Counted from the whole stretch's first letter, positions 1-14,280 are shown. The stretch is DNA of 63,129 bases, filler included, from Octopus bimaculoides (GCF_001194135.2; 6 parts of 6 records of this genome joined end to end with filler, not necessarily neighbours in it), one strand, 5' to 3'. Notes: a model not told the origin generated them from the sequence alone. Made by a program: numbers and translations.

Positions 1-52
<52 letters not shown>

Positions 53-100
53 TGTGTGCGTGTGTGTGTGAGCGTGTGTGCCTGCTTGTCTGTATTTGTG
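1..100. repeat. (TA)n/(TG)n compound microsatellite, representative of dozens across the window; many N gaps lie inside or beside such tracts
   Basis: Read directly from sequence; the low-complexity YI/CV/HT ORFs in the track derive from these tracts. Confidence 0.98.
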
Positions 101-1593: not shown

Positions 1594-2117
1594 TATGTAA
1601 ATAGATAAATATATATCATATACATTTAGTTATTTCTGAAACCGCGTTGGTGGATGTTCTTCACAAATACGGCTACGATTTCCTTCTTAACTATAAATAG
1701 AGACCCATATTAATGTATAATTATTTACTTCTACAAATTCTAATCATCTGTCCGATGAAACATTAACCGAATATATAATGTTTGATTCTGATTTTGTACT
1801 CAACGAAAGCCACAAAAATTCCATGTAATAACACTTCTCTTCGTTAAAATATTTTTACCATTCTAAAAGAAAAGATGTTGAATGAAGATTATGTATCTTT
1901 TCGCCAACGAGGAATTTCAAACTAGCAATTATTGAAACTAGAGCTTTAATCAACCAACTCTGAGTATAATCGTTTCTAATATTGGAACAAGGCCTGAAAT
2001 TTGTGGGAGAAGGATAGCTAATAGCATCGACACCAGTGCGTAACTGGTACTTATTTTATCGACCCACGAAACGATGACAGGCATCGCCGCTAAGGATTTC
2101 AGTTATATCAGAGCGGA

Positions 2118-2951
2118 GCTAAGCATTTCGTCCAGGGTGCGAGCGATTCCCCCAGCTCGCTGCTTTTCCAAGTTCTGAGTATAATCTTTTCTACTCTAGG
2201 CTCGAGGGCCGAAATATTGAGGGAGGTAGGTGCCAGTCGATTAGATTGACCCCAGTACGCAACTGGTATTTAGTTTATCGAACCCCGAAACGATGAAAGG
2301 CAAAGTCGACCGCGGTGGAATTTGAACTCAGAACTCTCACTGCCAACAGATTAGTAACCACGACCATCACCACCGCCGCGGTGGTGGTGGTGGTGGTGGT
2401 GGTAGTCGTCGTGGTGGTAGTGGTTGTGGTGATGGTGGTCGTGGTGGTGGTAGTCGACGTGGTGGTCGTGGTGTTGTTGTTGGTGCTGGTGGTGCTGGTG
2501 GTGGTGCTGGTGGTTATCGTGGTTTGAATGTNNNNNNNNNNGCTAAGCATTTCGTCCAGGGTGCGAGCGATTCCCCCAGCTCGCTGCTTTTCCAAGTTCT
2601 GAGTATAATCTTTTCTACTCTAGGCTCGAGGGCCGAAATATTGAGGGAGGTAGGTGCCAGTCGATTAGATTGACCCCAGTACGCAACTGGTATTTAGTTT
2701 ATCGAACCCCGAAACGATGAAAGGCAAAGTCGACCGCGGTGGAATTTGAACTCAGAACTCTCACTGCCAACAGATTAGTAACCACGACCATCACCACCGC
2801 CGCGGTGGTGGTGGTGGTGGTGGTGGTAGTCGTCGTGGTGGTAGTGGTTGTGGTGATGGTGGTCGTGGTGGTGGTAGTCGACGTGGTGGTCGTGGTGTTG
2901 TTGTTGGTGCTGGTGGTGCTGGTGGTGGTGCTGGTGGTTATCGTGGTTTGA
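2118..2951. repeat. Exact 424-bp tandem duplication across a 10-N gap (SINE fragment plus (GTG)n tract); probable unmerged contig overlap
   Basis: gctaagcatttcgtccaggg at 2118 and 2542; ORFs 2315..2527 and 2739..2951 are identical and offset by 424. Confidence 0.9.
2186..2335 (-). mobile_element. SINE family B fragment (tRNA-like head; core GTCGACTTTGCCTTTCATCCTTTCGGGGTCGATAAA)
   Basis: Matches the in-window consensus seen at 12463-12640, 44072-44240 and 50795-51000; B-box-like GAGTTCAAATTCC. Confidence 0.85.
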
Positions 2952-3294: not shown

Positions 3295-3325
<31 letters not shown>

Positions 3326-3526
3326 ACACATACACACACAAAGGAACAGTAGCATCTATATACACGTATTCGAGAACTTGTGCTTGTATGTATGTGTGTA
3401 TATGTATATATATATGTATATATGTATACATTACAGACTCAGCAAACAGCAACTGTGTGTTGAGTTCGTCTTTCCGTAATGACTGTAATTAGAAAAAGAT
3501 CTCTAATGTAGACATGTACACATGCG

Positions 3527-3561
<35 letters not shown>

Positions 3562-3573
3562 ATAAATACATAC

Positions 3574-3650
<77 letters not shown>

Positions 3651-3890
3651 AACATCTATATATGCAGATATATACATGTTTAGATATATATACATGAACA
3701 TATGTATATGTATATTTATATAAACACACATATATAAACATTTTTATACATACATATACATTTATATATATGTGTATATACATATATATNNNNNNNNNNN
3801 NNNNNNNNNNNNNNNNNNNNNNNNNNNNNNNNNNNNNNNNNNNNNNNNNNNNNNNNNNNNNNNNNNNNNNNNNNNNNNNNNNNNNNNNNN

Positions 3891-5099: not shown

Positions 5100-5525
5100 T
5101 ATTCCTGGATATTCTTTTCCACTCTAGACACAAGGCCCGAAACTTTTTGGCGGAGTGGGTCAGACAAAAGATCGACTCCAGTACGCAACTGGTACTTAAT
5201 TTATCGACCCTGAAAGGATGAAGGCGAAGTCGACTTCCTCGGAATTTCAAATCAGAACGTAAAGACAGACGAAATACCGCTAAGCATTTCGTCCGGCATG
5301 CTAACGAGACTTTTCTAGTCTAGGCACAAGGCCCGAAATTCTGGGGAAGGGGATCCAGTCGATTAGATCGACTCCAGTACGCAACTGTTACTTAATTTAT
5401 CAACCCCGAAAAGAGGAATGACGAAGTCGATCTCGGCGGAATTTGAACTCAGAACATAAAGACAGACGAAATATTGCGAAGCGTTTCGCCGGGATGCTAA
5501 CGATTCTGCCAGCCCGCCACCTTAC
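5100..5525 (-). mobile_element. Two adjacent SINE family B copies
   Basis: Repeated cacaaggcccgaa...gtacgcaactg...gaactcagaac...gacgaaata blocks at ~5130 and ~5325. Confidence 0.85.
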
Positions 5526-5894
5526 CACCAAGTTATGTTAATGACAGAATAACAAAACACAAAACAGTTCATTTCCTTTTCTCTCTTTCACATTCTCTCT
5601 CCTTCAACCTTTCTCTCTCTTTCCCTCTCTCTTACCTGCCCAAAAGGTTCAACTACCAATATAACGAGGTGTTTTACCACTAAACTCTTTCCATTTTTAC
5701 CATTTCTTTCTTGCAGATAATAATTTAAAAGCTAATTACTAACTTCATAAAACTAATTTTTTTTCCAAAACACACACAAAAAAGAGAAAGAAAGAAATAT
5801 ACAATTATTTCATTTTCTTTTTTAAAAGTACAATCGACACGTCTTTCTTTACTGTATTATGTAGCTAATATTTCTGTGTATCTTTTCACCAATC

Positions 5895-5937
<43 letters not shown>

Positions 5938-6071
5938 TGTATGTATATACATATATATGTATGTATGTATGTATATACATATATATGTATGTATATACAT
6001 ATATACATATATATGTATGTATATACATATATATGTATGTATGTATATACATACATATATATCTATCTATG

Positions 6072-6114
<43 letters not shown>

Positions 6115-6712
6115 CAGACAGACAACTGTCAAGTGACGCATTATATACATATGGATATATACATTTATTGTGACTTAAATTTATATATCTTGTGTATATG
6201 TTTGTGTGTTGTTTTATCATCCAGATTGTTGCTGTTCCTCTCATCATCATCATCATCATCATAATCATTGTCATTCTAATCATCATTATCACTGTTGTCA
6301 TCATCATCATCATCTTTGTCATTATTATTATTATCATTATTATTATCATGCTTGTTGTTCTGAAAACTTTCAACGCCTCCATACCTTGAGGGTGAAACTC
6401 CAAATTCATTAATTAAATTATATATTGCAATATATGTATATATATTTTTTGTTTTGTTATTTTATAAAAAAAATTAGTGTATAACACAAACAGTTGTCAC
6501 ACATAACTGTGTGCATACGCGCAGAAACACACAATGATATACATAGACATACATAGACATACATGTATGTGTGTGTGTGTCTATGTGTGTGTCTATGTGT
6601 TGCGGTTATAGTATGTTCTTTGTCATACTTCAATTATTTGTTAGCTTTTCTTGAGTTTCATTTGTCGCTCAATGATAAAGTTAGTAGCAGTAATAACAAC
6701 AGCATTATTATT

Positions 6713-6758
<46 letters not shown>

Positions 6759-6769
6759 TCAAAAATACG

Positions 6770-7003
6770 ATCATAATCGGAACTGCTGAGAAATGGTACA
6801 AACACCACCCTGGGGCTGTAACTGAGAGAGAAAACGTAACTATTCTTTGGGACTTCCCAGTATGTACAGATCTGACCATCAAGGCAAATAAACCAGATAT
6901 TGTTACGAAAGACAAAAGCAATAAAGTCTGTTTATTTATTGACATGAGCATACCCTGTGATTATAATATCTCGACAAAAGAATTTGATATGCTCAGAAAA
7001 TAT
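6770..7003 (+). mobile_element. R4/Dong-like non-LTR retrotransposon fragment, restriction-like endonuclease (PD-(D/E)xK) region
   Basis: KWYKHHPGAVTERENVTILWDFPVCTDLTIKANKPDIVTKDKSNKVCLFIDMSIP matches the ILWDF...RPDI...IDV.IP signature of RLE-clade elements. Confidence 0.85.
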
Positions 7004-7344
7004 GTGAGTATTATCTTCTACTTGTTTCGGTCGCTAGTTTGCGGTCAGGCTGGGATTCATCTTCTCGTGTTTTTTGTCAAACGAATCGACCGCAGTGATT
7101 ACTTTTTTCAAAAGTACGCTGCTTTTCTCACCGGTGTCTTTTGCCGAATCTCAAATTTGCAGGGATTTAAAGAAACCGACAACAGTCCTTCCAAGATAGT
7201 GGGGAATAAATACAAGCACAAGGAATTAACATACATACAGATATGTATTTTACTCTGCATACGTGTGTATGTGTGTATACGATGGCATCTTTCTCTTTTT
7301 GTCTACCAAATCCACCCTAAATGCATTATAGATATGTATATATA

Positions 7345-8034
7345 TACCTGCATACAAAAATCAGAGGAATGACCAGCAAATGTGGACTCCTATATGCTAG
7401 AAATAGATACCGAATCATCTAACTACGAAAAATATATGTTCTCAGTAAAAAATTCAGCGACACAACAGACTGTAAAAGGGCAAGACAAATGAAAAAATAC
7501 TAAATTAAAAAACGATTAACCTACGTACCATGGTTTCACCTGTTAAAATTTACATAAGTAAATATCTGCAGGATCGTCAGCGTAGTCTGTCGATTTGAGA
7601 TATAATTCCCAGAACTAGACACAAGACGTCCACCCGTAAGGGAGCACGTGTAGAGTTCTACAAATTACATTCAGTGTATCCTTTCAATTGTCTTCAATCT
7701 GGCGCGCTAAGTCCGCAAATAATTCTGCAGTTAATAAATTTTTGCAGCTAATTTACCGGTTTGAGAACATCATTATTTAAAATTTATTAATGAGGGTAGA
7801 AATTGATATTAATCAATTAAAACCAGTGGTCTAGCATATTAAAAAAATCCGAAGATTAAAATTATATTACATACAAAAATGTGGACTCCTATATGCTAGA
7901 AATAGATGCCGAATCATCTAACCACGAAAAGAATATGTTCTCAGTAAAAAATTCAGCGACACAACAGACTGTAAAAGGGCAAGACAAATTAAAAAATACT
8001 AAATTAAAAAACGATTAACCTACGTACCTGCATA
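7345..8034 (-). mobile_element. Non-coding hammerhead-bearing retroelement (retrozyme-like or non-autonomous Penelope pLTR-like): ~1.3 head-to-tail monomers with 10-bp TSD TACCTGCATA
   Basis: TSD at 7345-7354 and 8025-8034; direct repeat 7351-7529 vs 7870-8028 (offset 499-519); hammerhead at the monomer junction; no ORF seen. Confidence 0.8.
7521..7585 (-). ncRNA. Type I hammerhead ribozyme (predicted), cleavage after GUA between 7526 and 7525
   Basis: Minus strand: CTACG-CTGACGA-[T CCTG CAGAT ATTTAC TTAT GTAAAT TTTAA CAGG T]-GAAA-CCATGG-TA-CGTAG. Perfect 5-bp stem I, long stem II, palindromic stem III ACCATGGT. Confidence 0.8.
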
Positions 8035-8068: not shown

Positions 8069-8414
8069 NNNNNNNNNNNNNNNNNNNNNNNNNNNNNNNN
8101 NNNNNNNNNNNNNNNNNNNNNNNNNNNNNNNNNNNNNNNNNNNNNNNNNNNNNNNNNNNNNNNNNNNNNNNNNNNNNNNNNNNNNNNNNNNNNNNNNNNN
8201 NNNNNNNNNNNNNNNNNNNNNNNNNNNNNNNNNNNNNNNNNNNNNNNNNNNNNNNNNNNNNNNNNNNNNNNNNNNNNNNNNNNNNNNNNNNNNNNNNNNN
8301 NNNNNNNNNNNNNNNNNNNNNNNNNNNNNNNNNNNNNNNNNNNNNNNNNNNNNNNNNNNNNNNNNNNNNNNNNNNNNNNNNNNNNNNNNNNNNNNNNNNN
8401 NNNNNNNNNNNNNN

Positions 8415-9340: not shown

Positions 9341-9959
9341 NNNNNNNNNNNNNNNNNNNNNNNNNNNNNNNNNNNNNNNNNNNNNNNNNNNNNNNNNNNN
9401 NNNNNNNNNNNNNNNNNNNNNNNNNNNNNNNNNNNNNNNNNNNNNNNNNNNNNNNNNNNNNNNNNNNNNNNNNNNNNNNNNNNNNNNNNNNNNNNNNNNN
9501 NNNNNNNNNNNNNNNNNNNNNNNNNNNNNNNNNNNNNNNNNNNNNNNNNNNNNNNNNNNNNNNNNNNNNNNNNNNNNNNNNNNNNNNNNNNNNNNNNNNN
9601 NNNNNNNNNNNNNNNNNNNNNNNNNNNNNNNNNNNNNNNNNNNNNNNNNNNNNNNNNNNNNNNNNNNNNNNNNNNNNNNNNNNNNNNNNNNNNNNNNNNN
9701 NNNNNNNNNNNNNNNNNNNNNNNNNNNNNNNNNNNNNNNNNNNNNNNNNNNNNNNNNNNNNNNNNNNNNNNNNNNNNNNNNNNNNNNNNNNNNNNNNNNN
9801 NNNNNNNNNNNNNNNNNNNNNNNNNNNNNNNNNNNNNNNNNNNNNNNNNNNNNNNNNNNNNNNNNNNNNNNNNNNNNNNNNNNNNNNNNNNNNNNNNNNN
9901 NNNNNNNNNNNNNNNNNNNNNNNNNNNNNNNNNNNNNNNNNNNNNNNNNNNNNNNNNNN

Positions 9960-10195: not shown

Positions 10196-10399
10196 AATAA
10201 CAGAATATATATACACACGTGTGTGTGTGTGTGTGTGTGTGCCGCGTGTACACATATACATCCATAGATATAGATATAGTAAGTACGTACATGCATGTAC
10301 ATATGCATATAGAAAAGCAGATAGAGAGAGAGATACAGAGAGAGAGATACAGAGAGACAGATACAGAGAGAGGGAGACAGTGAGAGAGAGAGAGAGACA

Positions 10400-10442
<43 letters not shown>

Positions 10443-10645
10443 TCAGCCCTTGTTCAGCGACACCCTATTTATCATTGCCCATCACATCGATAAGTACATT
10501 TACGTATTAACCTGTATTTATTTACCTAAATTTGTCTTTGTTCCCTGTGTTATATTTCTAAGATTATAATTAGGACGCCTAATTATCAATATTTATATTA
10601 GAATAAAGTATGGCGTTAACGATACTTGTTATAAATGGCAATTAC

Positions 10646-10676
<31 letters not shown>

Positions 10677-11046
10677 TACACACATGACTTTGTTCCGCAT
10701 AGTCACACGGATACACACCCACGTATACGGAGAGAGTCATTCAGAGAAGGCGAGAGAATGGAAGATGTATATATGTATATATATATGGAGAGAGAGACGG
10801 AGAATATATATATATACATATATNNNNNNNNNNNNNNNNNNNNNNNNNNNNNNNNNNNNNNNNNNNNNNNNNNNNNNNNNNNNNNNNNNNNNNNNNNNNN
10901 NNNNNNNNNNNNNNNNNNNNNNNNNNNNNNNNNNNNNNNNNNNNNNNNNNNNNNNNNNNNNNNNNNNNNNNNNNNNNNNNNNNNNNNNNNNNNNNNNNNN
11001 NNNNNNNNNNNNNNNNNNNNNNNNNNNNNNNNNNNNNNNNNNNNNN

Positions 11047-11115
<69 letters not shown>

Positions 11116-12462
11116 CGAAAGTGACAGATGAAAGAAGAGCATACTACATAAATGCATAATATATACACTCATAGCATGTGTGTGTGTGTCCATGTCTGTG
11201 TGTTTATATATATATATATTATATTATATGTATATATGTGTGTATATACATATATTAATAGGATACCTCACTAAGATTAAGTGCGCCTATTATCAAAATG
11301 ACGAACTTAAATATTCGACACACGAGATTATTAATTCTTGTTGAATGTCTTGGAAGCGTTCCTAACTATTATCGGCATCTATTAAAACTTCGATCGACCG
11401 TAATTCTTTATTCTTCGCCAGGTAGATTTCGATTCGTATGATTAACTGCGAAATTGAGCGTACAAAGTACTAATTAATTTCTTACTAATACTTTAGAGTT
11501 GTGTCTCATTAAGGTTAAGCTTCAAATGGTAGCAACGTATTCCTTCTCGAAATTTCGACAGAAATATAATTATGTATCTGTGTATTAATGAAAGTATATA
11601 AAACTGGCATATTACCAATACTATTGGTGCTTAATAACATCGGCATTTTCATTTCATTAGCACATTACAAAAATATTGGTCGGTCTACATATTAAATTAT
11701 TATCTTTAATAGAATCTGAAAACAATGCATATGAAATTTTGTCTTACAACAATGGGAAGGTGTTTGCACTGGCTTGTAGTTCGAAACGATTCTTAATATG
11801 TTTGGCAATTTTTCCAAGTCCTGTGTGTCGTGTTTCTATTTTTAATTGAAAGCCAACACGAAAAATCTCACAGCTTAGATACCTTGGTGTTTAATTAGGA
11901 AACCCACGGGAGTTGAGTCAGCCAAAAATCTAAACCACAATTTAGAGAATGGTGGAGTGGTTAGTCTTGGGAATGACAATGGCTCCTTTAACCTTTTCAG
12001 TTACAAGAGGAGCTGCCAGGAGTGAACGCAAAATTTCATTAAGTTTTTGTGATAGAAGAATAAAATAATGCGTGTTAGTATGACTGTTAAATCTTCACGA
12101 ATCTTTATTTAGTCTCCTGCCATTGAGAAGATATCTGTTTTATATGTCGTTGAAATTTTCGTTACCGAGGGCAGGAGTTCTAATACAGTTTGGGCCCACT
12201 GTTTCTTTTATATTTCTTGAGAAGATAAAAGAAAATTCCAGTTATAGACTGCCTAACGATTAATCAATTCATCTATCAAAACTTGACCTTATTTTATTTG
12301 CAAGCGCAGGTATAGCTGTATGATTAAGAAGGTCACCTTGCAACCATGTGATTTTGGGTTCAGTCCCATTGCGCGGCAGCATGTGCGTGTGTCTCCTACT
12401 TTAGCCCCAGGCCAACGAATAGCTTCTGAGAGAATTTGCAAAGCAGAAACTATGTAGATGCT

Positions 12463-12640
12463 TAGGCGGCGAGCTGGCAGAAACGTTAGCACTACGGGCG
12501 AAATGCTTAGCGCTATTTCGTCTGCCGTTTCGTTCTGAGTTCAAATTTCGCCGAGGTCGACTTTGCCTTTCACCATTTCGGAGTCGATAAATCAAGTACC
12601 AGTTACGCACTGGGACGATGTAATCGACTTAATTCCTTTG
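12463..12640 (+). mobile_element. SINE family B near-full copy, preceded by a family A head (~12303-12440)
   Basis: GGCGGCGAGCTGGCAGAA A-box-like start, GAGTTCAAATTTC B-box-like, conserved core. Confidence 0.88.
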
Positions 12641-12740: not shown

Positions 12741-13020
12741 ATACAAAAATAAGAGGAATGACCAGCAAAAGTGGACTCCTATATGCTAGAAATAGATGCC
12801 GAATCATCTAACCACGAAAAAAATATATATATTCTCATGACAACATTTTTTTTTCGTGGTTAGATGATTCGGCATCTATTTCTAGCATATAGGAGTCCAC
12901 TTTTGCTGGTCATTCCTCTTATTTTTGTATGTAATATAATTTTAATCTTCGGATTTTTTTTAATATGCTAGACCACTGGTTTTAATTGATTAATATCAAT
13001 TTCTACCCTCATTAATAAAT
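12741..13020. mobile_element. Second member of the 7345-8034 family, rearranged into a perfect 83-bp inverted repeat (arms 12741-12823 and 12848-12930) plus a 90-bp extension
   Basis: Arms are exact reverse complements; sequence matches 7351-7430 and ~7780-7930; tttagatagataga on both flanks. Confidence 0.9.
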
Positions 13021-14088
13021 TTTAGATAGATAGATAGGTAGGTAGGTAGAGAGACAGACAGACAGACAGATAGATAGACAAAACTAGGATAAACATGCGT
13101 TATATAAAATAAACTTGTGTTTATCTTTAGTTTTCCTGTATTTGTTCTGTAACTCATAACTAGTAACACTAATCACTATGGATGTTACTTAACAATTAAA
13201 CAGAAAGGAGACTGCGTGATGACAATCTACATGGAACTCTACACATAACTAGCAATTATTTATGTGCTCAATATCTACTATATGTGTGTGTGTCAGTATG
13301 TATATGTGTGCGCCTGTAAAAGATTTAACTGTGTGGAGATAAATATATCAGTCTTAGACTTCTGTTAATTAAAAATTACTTGTTCACGGATACAGTGAAC
13401 TTGCTACATACCCCCAAGCTTTGATCCAATGTTATACCTTTCAAATATTATGATATCCGGACATTGCTGCACCACATAGAATGCATTATTATTCTCCATT
13501 AAACAGCAAAGATTGATAACTATGAAGAGTCAGCTTGTGTTTCGCATCCGTAGTCTTTTGTTTGTTGAAAACTAAAAGCAGTAACAACTGCCTAATTCTA
13601 ACACAAGATTTTATCGACATTCGGGTAGATACAATGCTGGGCTGACCCCAAAATAATTTGCAATGGTTATGTAAAAGCTTCGACTAAATATATCAGGTCT
13701 TTTGTCTAACACACTTGACATTCTTCAACTTTATCCACTGCCACGGAAGGAAGGGCATGTCGATCACTCGGGAACGATTGTAATTTGATACCAGATTCCC
13801 TGATTTTGGCTCGTATTTTCAGATTGTTTTCTGTTTTGTTTTCTTTGACACATTCTGATACAATGAGTCCGCCTATATGTCAGAATACAATTCTATATCC
13901 TGGATTAAGGGTAATAAATCCATACCTACTTTGTATTGAAAATTACTTCTTCCAGTTTTGTTGTCATAGCCATGATTAATGTAGCTTTAATTATATTAAT
14001 CAACTTCTAACTCCTCATCCACACGCCTAAAACAAAAATGCTTCTTTCTTTCCTATTTCAATGAACAGAGATGTGTGATGGAAGTACA

Positions 14089-14185
<97 letters not shown>

Positions 14186-14280
14186 GAGCATATATATATA
14201 TAAATAGATACATAGATAGATAGAGAGAGAGAGGAANNNNNNNNNNNNNNNNNNNNNNNNNNNNNNNNNNNNNNNNNNNN

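What the first reader, a model, noticed from the sequence alone, without database searches (positions are those of the whole stretch)
7521..7585. Complete type I hammerhead ribozyme fold on the minus strand with a palindromic stem III
Seen: the minus strand reads CTACG CTGACGA TCCTGCAGATATTTAC TTAT GTAAATTTTAACAGGT GAAA CCATGG TA CGTAG. All conserved core bases are present (CUGANGA, GAAA, GUA). Stem I is a perfect 5 bp and stem II is a symmetric 16+4+16 hairpin. Stem III is the 8-nt palindrome ACCATGGT, too short to be a stable hairpin by itself. Established: type I hammerheads with short palindromic helix III occur in Penelope-like elements and animal non-LTR retrozymes and can cleave as dimers. 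Inference: this is a recently active self-cleaving RNA. The long stem II and the U-U pair at 10.1-11.1 are atypical.
Basis: partly seen in the sequence, partly recalled or inferred. Interest (0 to 1): 0.85.

Follow-up and report, generated by a model that had tools for sequence, protein, structure and literature searches.

The report
Hammerhead ribozyme in a small retroelement
The motif is real and is most likely the self-cleaving hammerhead ribozyme of a roughly 500-base non-coding retroelement related to Penelope-like elements, which is a known kind of animal mobile DNA and not a new one.

Summary
The described sequence is present on the minus strand at 7585-7521. It has the full hammerhead core (CUGACGA / GAAAC / GUA), a perfect 5-bp helix I, a long imperfect helix II, and the 8-nt palindrome ACCAUGGU as helix III.

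The motif evidence alone is moderate:
- A descriptor scan finds this site only, against about 0.003 expected per shuffled window.
- Rfam reports no hammerhead, even at E<=10.
- A model built from four experimentally validated retrozyme hammerheads ranks the site first in the window, but at only 10.8 bits (E~0.2).

The context decides it:
- The motif ends a 499-nt ORF-free unit, present as 1.35 head-to-tail copies on the sense strand.
- The insertion lies in a (TA)n/(TATG)n microsatellite, flanked by a 10-nt duplication (TATGCAGGTA).
- The insertion begins at the nucleotide 3' of the predicted cleavage site.
- Two 5'-truncated copies lie head-to-head in a (GATA)n microsatellite at 12741-13022.

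These are hallmarks of Penelope-like elements and non-LTR retrozymes. The "atypical" U-U pair, GUA triplet and 8-nt palindrome also occur in the validated axolotl HHR_Amex2.

Verdict: a new member of a known kind. Recent activity of this copy is not shown.

The parts
7521..7585 (-). Type I hammerhead motif. Helix I 7585-7581/7525-7521; core CUGACGA 7580-7574; helix II hairpin 7573-7538; GAA 7537-7535; palindromic helix III ACCAUGGU 7534-7527; A17 at 7526; predicted cleavage between 7526 and 7525.
   Evidence: Read directly. Only descriptor hit in the window. 0.0033 expected per shuffled window. Best hit of custom model R1, 10.8 bits. No Rfam hit.
7526..8024 (-). One complete 499-nt unit of the element, from the nucleotide after the cleavage-equivalent site (C at 8024) to A17 of the hammerhead (7526). 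It has 33% GC and no ORF above 45 aa. It carries a 20-nt deletion relative to the other copies.
   Evidence: Self-BLAST and alignments. ORF lists. Folded as a circle, MFE -127.4 kcal/mol, z = -5.1 against dinucleotide shuffles.
7355..7525 (-). Partial second unit (pseudo-LTR-like repeat of the first ~175 nt), ending at ...GATTTTTG(TAT). 96.7% identical to 8028-7877 over 152 nt.
   Evidence: Copy D shares the same 3' terminus.
8025..8034 (-). 5' copy of the putative target-site duplication TATGCAGGTA. Its last 4 nt (GGTA) are also identical to the last 4 nt of the unit.
   Evidence: Read; alignment.
7345..7354 (-). 3' copy of the putative target-site duplication TATGCAGGTA, followed by a (TA)n microsatellite.
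   Evidence: Read; alignment.
12741..12830 (-). Copy D. A 5'-truncated copy of the unit (about positions 90-195) in the same orientation as the hammerhead locus, ending at the same ...ATTTTTG(TAT) terminus next to a (GATA)n microsatellite. It lacks the ribozyme part.
12831..13022 (+). Copy C. A 5'-truncated copy in the opposite orientation, head-to-head with D. It reads through the usual 3' terminus into the unit's middle and ends at a (GATA)n/(GGTA)n/(GACA)n microsatellite. It lacks the ribozyme part.

Best explanation
What it is. The motif is the hammerhead ribozyme of a small (499-519 nt), AT-rich, non-coding retroelement. The element is of the animal non-LTR retrozyme / non-autonomous Penelope-like kind, and the ribozyme lies on its sense strand.

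Shown:
- The full catalytic consensus and the three helices are present.
- The ribozyme sits at the 3' end of a repeat unit that is present as 1.35 head-to-tail copies.
- The insertion is bounded by a 10-nt duplication inside a TA-rich microsatellite.
- The insertion begins at the nucleotide immediately 3' of the predicted cleavage site, or 4 nt upstream if GGTA is counted as element.

Inferred mechanism:
- Transcripts from multi-copy source loci fold two ribozymes into a double hammerhead through the palindrome ACCAUGGU.
- Cleavage follows GUA and leaves a 5'-OH at C1.1.
- A reverse transcriptase supplied in trans, most likely by an autonomous Penelope-like element, primes at a nick in a microsatellite. 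Priming uses short homology to an internal site (...UUUUUG UAUG).
- It copies more than one unit, either from an RNA in which the internal ribozyme site is intact or religated, or by jumping from the 5' end of one monomer to the 3' end of another.
- It runs off at the ribozyme-made 5' end. This gives the observed A-B-A structure.

Status of this copy. The locus has a single ribozyme. It is probably a dead-end copy that could cleave only with a partner RNA.
For: - Core, helices and coordinates were read directly. The site is the only descriptor hit in the window, against 0.0033 expected per shuffled window.
- It meets the consensus used in the field, CUGANGA / GAAAY / RUH (PMC7229834 supplement).
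- Helix III is 2 bp plus a palindromic tetraloop, an 8-nt palindrome as in mussel Mg353 (ACGCGCGU) and axolotl Ax353 (ACACGUGU). U-U at the base of helix II and GUA match Ax353/HHR_Amex2, which cleaves 22% as a monomer and efficiently as a dimer.
- The dimer MFE is the double hammerhead, -37.0 against 2 x -13.3 kcal/mol. Only about 0.1% of monomers are in the active fold. The validated coral and Ax353 ribozymes behave the same way.
- Partial tandem of a 499-nt unit, 96.7% identical over 152 nt.
- Homology between the outer and inner copies starts at GGTA|CGTAGG. TATGCAGGTA lies at both junctions. A boundary within 4 nt of the cleavage site has p of about 0.01-0.02 under random truncation.
- Copy D shares the 3' terminus. 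The copies are 5'-truncated, so the ribozyme strand is the element's sense strand.
- The head-to-head copies C/D and the microsatellite targets match published hallmarks of Penelope-like elements (PMC8557442).
- Retrozyme units of 51-972 bp with frequent monomers are reported, together with derivation from Penelope-like pLTRs (bioRxiv 10.64898/2026.07.22.740005).
- The unit is unusually structured as a circle, z = -5.1.
- It is the top hit of a model trained on four validated retrozyme hammerheads.
Against: - Rfam hammerhead models do not report the site even at E<=10.
- The custom model scores only 10.8 bits, E~0.23.
- G10.1-C11.1 is highly conserved and listed as a hallmark of Penelope-like hammerheads (PMC4209133). 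Here it is replaced by U-U.
- Helix II (36 nt, with internal mismatches) is far longer than the 3-8 bp reported.
- Only one ribozyme-bearing copy is available, so conservation, covariation and the generality of the 5'-end coincidence are untested (n = 1).
- GGTA is shared by the target duplication and the unit's end, so the 5' junction could reflect microhomology joining and not a cleaved end.
- No reverse transcriptase or GIY-YIG ORF is in the window.
- The two arms differ by 3.3% plus a 20-nt indel, so the insertion is not very young, or it came from heterogeneous templates.
Confidence: 0.72

Rival explanations
1. The motif descends from a real hammerhead but no longer cleaves, and perhaps never cleaved efficiently. 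On this reading, the 5' boundary at GGTA|CGTAGG arose from microhomology-mediated joining of a cDNA copied from a circular or multimeric template. It would not then mark a ribozyme-made RNA end.
For: - U-U replaces G10.1-C11.1 (conservation stated in PMC4209133).
- Metazoan Penelope-like hammerheads cleave poorly in vitro.
- GGTA occurs both in the duplicated target and at the end of the unit.
- The arms have diverged 3.3%, so about one post-insertion change is expected in 65 nt.
- Covariance-model scores are weak.
Against: - The same U-U/GUA/palindrome architecture cleaves in axolotl HHR_Amex2.
- No core position is mutated.
- The 10-nt duplication is explained most simply if the element starts exactly at C1.1.
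- The dimer fold is the MFE.
Confidence: 0.18
2. The motif is a chance match to the hammerhead consensus inside an AT-rich repeat that has nothing to do with ribozymes.
For: - The descriptor expectation of 0.003 per 14-kb window implies hundreds of chance hits in a gigabase genome.
- Rfam gives no hit.
- The custom model gives E~0.23.
- No second ribozyme copy was seen.
Against: Several independent coincidences would all be needed:
- The motif lies on the sense strand of a retroelement.
- Its predicted cleavage site falls within 0-4 nt of the insertion's 5' end (p about 0.002-0.02).
- Helix II pairs well beyond the required 4 bp.
- Helix III has the palindrome typical of the family.
- The element shows the insertion hallmarks of Penelope-like elements.
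Confidence: 0.07
3. The 1.35-unit structure is the remnant of an autonomous Penelope-like element whose coding region was deleted, leaving two pseudo-LTRs. On this reading it is not a dedicated non-autonomous retrozyme family.
For: - The A-B-A layout resembles pLTR-body-pLTR.
- Penelope-like elements carry hammerheads near their 3' ends in pLTRs and form inverted truncated copies (PMC8557442).
- Retrozymes are reported to derive from pLTRs.
Against: - There is no trace of a reverse transcriptase or GIY-YIG frame in the 325-nt middle region or elsewhere in the window.
- Copy C carries the same short middle region contiguous with region A, so the short form itself transposed.
Confidence: 0.15

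Closest known systems
Axolotl non-LTR retrozyme hammerhead HHR_Amex2 (construct Ax353; Cervera and de la Pena 2020, PMC7229834)
   Same: - Type I topology.
- U-U mismatch at the base of helix II.
- Helix III of 2 bp plus a palindromic tetraloop, an 8-nt palindrome (ACACGUGU there, ACCAUGGU here).
- GUA cleavage triplet.
- Predicted double-hammerhead dimer as MFE, with nearly the same gain over two monomers (-10.5 there, -10.4 kcal/mol here).
   Different: - Helix II is 3 bp plus a 5-nt loop there, against a 36-nt imperfect hairpin here.
- Helix I is 6 bp there, 5 bp here.
- The unit is 350 nt in long tandem arrays there, 499-519 nt in 1.35 copies here.
- There is no sequence similarity outside the core.
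Mussel (Mytilus galloprovincialis) retrozyme hammerhead (construct Mg353; PMC7229834)
   Same: - Mollusc-type retrozyme ribozyme with an 8-nt palindromic helix III (ACGCGCGU).
- AT-rich, ORF-free unit of a few hundred nt.
- Self-paired circular RNA.
   Different: - G10.1-C11.1 and GUC there, against U-U and GUA here.
- Short helix II there.
- Unit of 350-390 nt in tandem arrays there.
Minimal hammerheads of metazoan Penelope-like elements (Cervera and de la Pena 2014, PMC4209133)
   Same: - Short helix I (4-5 bp).
- Helix II larger than usual.
- An extra nucleotide after A9.
- Palindromic 15.2-16.2/loop 3 and dimer-dependent activity.
- Location in direct terminal repeats of a retroelement that inserts as partial tandems.
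   Different: - Those motifs keep G10.1-C11.1 and mostly lack a loop 3.
- They flank a reverse transcriptase/GIY-YIG ORF, which is absent here.
Plant LTR retrozymes (Cervera et al. 2016, PMC4918200)
   Same: Non-autonomous retroelement whose repeats carry hammerheads and whose RNA is thought to be cut out and circularised.
   Different: - Type III ribozymes there.
- True LTRs with a primer binding site and polypurine tract.
- GC-rich.
- Mobilised by Ty3/gypsy elements.

Membership tests
Hammerhead ribozyme, type I | Conserved catalytic centre CUGANGA / GAAAY / RUH, in the order helix I 5' strand - core - helix II - GAA - helix III - H17 - helix I 3' strand | tested here: met
   CUGACGA / GAAAC / GUA in the correct order, with helix I open. 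The consensus is as stated in the PMC7229834 supplement.
Hammerhead ribozyme, type I | A15.1-U16.1 pair and H17 not G | tested here: met
   A at 7534, U at 7527, A17 at 7526.
Hammerhead ribozyme, type I | G10.1-C11.1 pair at the base of helix II (highly conserved, not absolute) | tested here: not met
   U-U at 7573/7538. A validated natural exception with U-U exists: HHR_Amex2.
Hammerhead ribozyme, type I | Score at or above the Rfam gathering threshold for a hammerhead model | tested here: not met
   No hammerhead family is listed at E<=10 in the window or in 7480-7630. The custom model from four validated ribozymes gives its best hit here, but at 10.8 bits, E~0.23.
Hammerhead ribozyme, type I | Conservation of the core and compensatory changes in the helices across related copies | not testable with these tools
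   The window holds only one ribozyme-bearing copy. Protein-index and DNA-pattern searches of all collections found no further copies.
Hammerhead ribozyme, type I | Site-specific self-cleavage after H17 | not testable with these tools
   This needs transcription and cleavage assays. There is indirect support only: the insertion starts at C1.1.
Metazoan non-LTR retrozyme | Type I hammerhead with a short helix III capped by a palindromic loop, predicted to act as a dimer | tested here: met
   ACCAUGGU. The dimer MFE is the double hammerhead.
Metazoan non-LTR retrozyme | Head-to-tail repeats of a few hundred bp, each carrying a ribozyme | tested here: inconclusive
   1.35 units of 499 nt with one complete ribozyme. 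TRF reports no array. Monomeric and low-copy loci are reported for this class.
Metazoan non-LTR retrozyme | Low GC (<45%), no coding capacity | tested here: met
   33% GC. The longest ORF in the unit is 45 aa and has no relatives.
Metazoan non-LTR retrozyme | Unit RNA highly self-paired; expressed as circular RNA | tested here: inconclusive
   In silico, the circular MFE is -127.4 kcal/mol, z = -5.1, with 63% of bases paired. Expression and circularity cannot be tested here.
Penelope-like element (autonomous) | ORF with reverse transcriptase and GIY-YIG endonuclease | tested here: not met
   No such ORF exists in any frame of the window. The only protein-like piece (6770-7020, + strand) has no Pfam match.
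Penelope-like element (insertion hallmarks) | Partial tandems forming pseudo-LTRs, adjacent inverted 5'-truncated copies, and a bias for microsatellite targets | tested here: met
   A-B-A structure at 8024-7355. Head-to-head copies D/C at 12741-13022. The flanks are (TA)n/(TATG)n and (GATA)n. The hallmarks are as described in PMC8557442.

The most novel reading that the evidence does not exclude
This insertion would record how such elements make their pseudo-LTRs. The cDNA started at a fixed internal site next to a microsatellite nick. It passed one intact (or religated, or template-jumped) ribozyme site and ended exactly at the 5'-OH made by hammerhead cleavage. If most genomic copies share this C1.1 start, the transposing template is a ribozyme-cut linear RNA and not the circular RNA currently favoured. 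The hammerhead would then define the element's 5' end in vivo. The long helix II would be a lineage-specific variant of the ribozyme.
Probability: 0.3. Interest if true: 0.55.

Novelty: new member of a known kind. Interest (0 to 1): 0.35.

Why it matters
- Hammerheads in animal genomes are known by the tens of thousands, and their link to Penelope-like elements and retrozymes is published. One more family is not a surprise.
- The locus is still a clean, single-insertion example. A target-site duplication fixes the element's first nucleotide at the predicted cleavage site. That is indirect genomic evidence that the ribozyme cuts in vivo and that a cleaved RNA end was copied.
- It also shows that Rfam models miss this class of hammerhead, with its long helix II and U-U at 10.1/11.1. 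This matters for anyone counting ribozymes by covariance model alone.
- The host could not be identified with the tools. The repeats recall cephalopod sequence, but that rests on memory only and is unverified. If the host is a cephalopod, the searchable literature describes no hammerhead in that group.

Tried and rejected
- Rfam at E<=10, on the whole window and on 151 nt around the site, gave no hammerhead. The only hits there (PinT, mir-499) are noise.
- I tried to fetch further family copies. The protein index was searched with the unit's 45-aa ORF and found no candidate. The neighbouring retrotransposon-like ORF found two short ENA contigs from another organism, which were useless for the ribozyme.
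- Exact-pattern scans with two conserved 25-27-mers of the unit found nothing: JGI metagenomes twice, IMG/VR once, GTDB genomes once. Covariation could therefore not be tested.
- The custom covariance model from four validated retrozyme hammerheads ranks the site first but is not significant.
- TRF does not report the 499-nt partial tandem, because there are too few copies and the period is at its limit.
- I considered that the 20 nt GCTGGTCATTCCTCTGATTT in the second arm was a Penelope-type 'tail'. I rejected this because copies C and D carry it too, so the first arm has a deletion.
- I considered that the miRNA-like Rfam hits at 12742-12929 were a real hairpin gene. I rejected this because they are the head-to-head copies D/C.
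- I looked for a reverse transcriptase or GIY-YIG frame in the window and found none.
- A literature search for a diagnostic repeat string, meant to identify the host, found nothing.

Full report
**1. Observation**

In hammerhead numbering the positions are:
- Helix I: 7585-7581 with 7525-7521, five Watson-Crick pairs.
- C3-A9: 7580-7574.
- Helix II: 7573-7538.
- G12-A14: 7537-7535.
- A15.1 to U16.1: 7534-7527.
- A17: 7526.
- Predicted cleavage: between 7526 and 7525.

Helix II is symmetric in length but imperfect, with 12 of 16 positions paired. It has U-U at its base, a C-A/A-A internal loop and one more U-U.

**2. Is it more than chance?**

- A descriptor of my own required CUGANGA, a closed helix II with one mismatch allowed at 10.1/11.1, GAAA, A15.1...U16.1, H17 and helix I. 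It finds this site and nothing else on either strand.
- In 3000 Markov shuffles of the window, the expectation was 0.020 hits per window at relaxed settings. It was 0.0033 at the observed stringency and 0.0003 if the 4-bp palindrome is required.
- That is unlikely for one window. Over a gigabase genome it would still give hundreds of chance hits.
- Rfam lists no hammerhead family at E<=10, in the whole window or in a 151-nt slice.
- I built a covariance model from four ribozymes that were shown to cleave: coral Amil224, mussel Mg353, and axolotl Ax353 and Ax330. The sequences came from Supplementary Table 2 of PMC7229834.
- With filters off, that model ranks this site first in the window and aligns it end to end. 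The score is only 10.8 bits, E about 0.23, because of the 28-nt insertion in loop 2 and the different helix I.
- Taken alone, the motif is suggestive but not conclusive.

**3. Context**

The decisive evidence is around the motif.

*The hammerhead locus.*
- On the minus strand, 8028-7877 and 7529-7378 are 96.7% identical over 152 nt.
- The similarity begins at GGTA|CGTAGG, which is at the cleavage-equivalent position.
- The locus is therefore one full 499-nt unit (8024-7526) that ends in the hammerhead. It is followed by the first ~175 nt of a second unit (7525-7355).
- After a 20-nt indel the second arm continues as TTGTATG and then breaks into (TA)n.
- The 10-mer TATGCAGGTA lies immediately 5' of the first unit (8034-8025) and immediately 3' of the last element base (7354-7345). 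Both outer flanks are (TA)n/(TATG)n.
- I read this as a target-site duplication. On that reading the inserted element starts exactly at C1.1, the first nucleotide after the predicted cleavage site.
- If the shared GGTA is assigned to the element instead, the start is 4 nt upstream.
- Under random 5' truncation of a 499-nt unit, this coincidence has a probability of roughly 0.002 to 0.02. It is independent of the motif match.

*The second locus.*
- Copy D (12741-12830, same orientation) is 5'-truncated and ends at the same ...ATTTTTG(TAT) terminus.
- Copy C (12831-13022, opposite orientation) joins D head-to-head and reads on into the middle of the unit.
- Both are embedded in (GATA)n-type microsatellites.
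- C and D both carry the 20 nt that the first arm lacks, so the consensus unit is about 519 nt.
- The 5' truncations and the shared 3' end fix the polarity of the element. The hammerhead lies on its sense strand.

*Other properties of the unit.*
- No ORF is longer than 45 aa, and that ORF has no relatives.
- GC content is 33%.
- Folded as a circle, the MFE is -127.4 kcal/mol. Dinucleotide shuffles give -95.5 +/- 6.2, so z = -5.1. Neighbouring segments of 31-37% GC give -82 to -113 kcal/mol.

**4. How it most likely works**

*Folding.*
- The monomer does not favour the active fold: -10.0 kcal/mol against an ensemble energy of -14.1, which is about 0.1% occupancy.
- Two copies have the double hammerhead as their MFE, at -37.0 kcal/mol against 2 x -13.3. 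In that fold, helix III is an 8-bp intermolecular duplex of the palindrome, helices I are swapped between the copies, and both cores are unpaired.
- The validated coral and axolotl Ax353 ribozymes behave the same way in the same calculation.

*Inferred steps.*
- Multi-copy source transcripts dimerise through ACCAUGGU and cleave after GUA.
- A reverse transcriptase supplied in trans primes at a nicked microsatellite, on the internal ...UUUUUG UAUG site. Short homology to (TATG)n or (TATC)n is visible at both independent 3' junctions.
- It copies more than one unit and stops at the ribozyme-made 5' end.
- This gives the A-B-A pseudo-LTR structure.

*What is shown and what is not.* The anatomy is shown. 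The cleavage, the priming and the identity of the reverse transcriptase are inferred. This locus holds a single ribozyme, so it could not release a unit-length RNA by itself.

**5. Comparison with what is known**

- Cervera and de la Pena (2014, PMC4209133) describe hammerheads of Penelope-like elements. These have a short helix I (4-5 bp), a helix II larger than usual, an extra nucleotide after A9, palindromic 15.2-16.2/loop 3, dimer-dependent and weak cleavage, and a conserved G10.1-C11.1.
- Cervera and de la Pena (2020, PMC7229834) describe non-LTR retrozymes. These are AT-rich, ORF-free tandem units of 170-400 nt, expressed as self-paired circular RNAs.
- The axolotl HHR_Amex2 family in that paper has a U-U mismatch at the base of helix II and a 2-bp helix III with a tetraloop. 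It cleaves 22% as a monomer and efficiently as a dimer. Its sequence...CUGAUGA-U-GCC...GGC-U-GAA-ACACGUGU-A|UGGGG, has the same architecture as the candidate, including GUA.
- Craig et al. (2021, PMC8557442) list partial tandems forming pLTRs, adjacent inverted 5'-truncated copies and a bias for (TA)n targets as hallmarks of Penelope-like insertions.
- A 2026 preprint (10.64898/2026.07.22.740005) reports retrozyme consensus lengths of 51-972 bp, frequent monomers, and derivation of animal retrozymes from Penelope-like pLTRs.
- The candidate matches these descriptions in nearly every respect. It differs in three ways:
  - Helix II is 36 nt.
  - G10.1-C11.1 is absent. This departs from the Penelope-like consensus, but a validated retrozyme shares the same U-U.
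  - The unit is somewhat long and the copy number at this locus is low.
- No reverse transcriptase or GIY-YIG frame is in the window. This is not an autonomous Penelope-like element.

**6. What could not be done**

- No collection available here holds the source genome.
- The protein index found nothing for the unit's ORF. It found only two short foreign contigs for the neighbouring ORF.
- Four exact-pattern scans of metagenome, viral and prokaryotic collections found nothing.
- Conservation and covariation of the ribozyme, and the generality of the C1.1 start, therefore remain untested.
- The host organism is unknown. From memory the SINE-like repeats and microsatellite load recall cephalopod sequence, but I could not verify this.
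- Octopus genomes are reported to hold Penelope-like elements (PMC13282606). I found no paper describing hammerheads in cephalopods.

**7. Verdict**

- The interpretation as a Penelope-like/retrozyme-type dimeric type I hammerhead is well supported by context. The claim of recent activity for this copy is not.
- This is a new member of a known kind.
- Its most interesting aspect is the single clean insertion whose first base coincides with the predicted cleavage site. That would be worth checking genome-wide.
- Confidence that this is a genuine hammerhead-family motif of such an element is about 0.9.
- Confidence in the full mechanism as stated is about 0.7.
- Interest is 0.35.

Noticed in passing
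window 2118-2531 and 2542-2955: 414 nt are 100% identical on either side of the 10-N gap at 2532-2541. This looks like a scaffolding or gap-closing duplicate and not a biological repeat.
   Followed up: partly
window 1959-2083, 2174-2334, 2598-2758, 5109-5258, 5310-5522, 12464-12629 (-): A SINE-like dispersed repeat family, 77-84% identical, with two adjacent copies at 5109-5522. ARAGORN finds no tRNA gene in the window.
   Followed up: partly
window 6770-7020 (+), within ORF 6563-7372: A protein-like fragment (GTAEKWYKHHPGAV...KPDIVTKDKSNKVCLFIDMSIPCDYNISTKEFDMLRKY). It has only two relatives, 79% and 66% identical, on short ENA metagenome contigs. It has no Pfam match. From memory it resembles the C-terminal tail of invertebrate non-LTR retrotransposon proteins. 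It lies on the strand opposite to the hammerhead element and is separate from it.
   Followed up: partly
window 12742-12929: The Rfam hits to MIR1878, MIR159 and mir-4536, all below gathering score, are caused by the head-to-head copies D and C of the hammerhead element. Those copies form a 94% complementary 190-nt palindrome.
   Followed up: yes
window 1-100, 3300-3790, 5890-6125, 6510-6600, 10200-10450, 11050-11260, 14070-14236: Dense TA/TG/GA/GATA microsatellites generate all the mir-297, mir-3149, mir-1277 and mir-466 Rfam hits, none of which reaches gathering score. There are six N gaps (715-1545, 2532-2541, 3790-3890, 8069-8414, 9341-9959, 10824-11046). Most abut microsatellites, which is typical of a short-read draft assembly.
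   Followed up: partly
window 7378-7355 vs 7876 (minus strand): A 20-nt indel (GCTGGTCATTCCTCTGATTT) is flanked by the direct repeat ATTT. It is present in the second arm and in copies C and D, and absent from the first arm. This is probably a slippage deletion in the first arm.
   Followed up: yes
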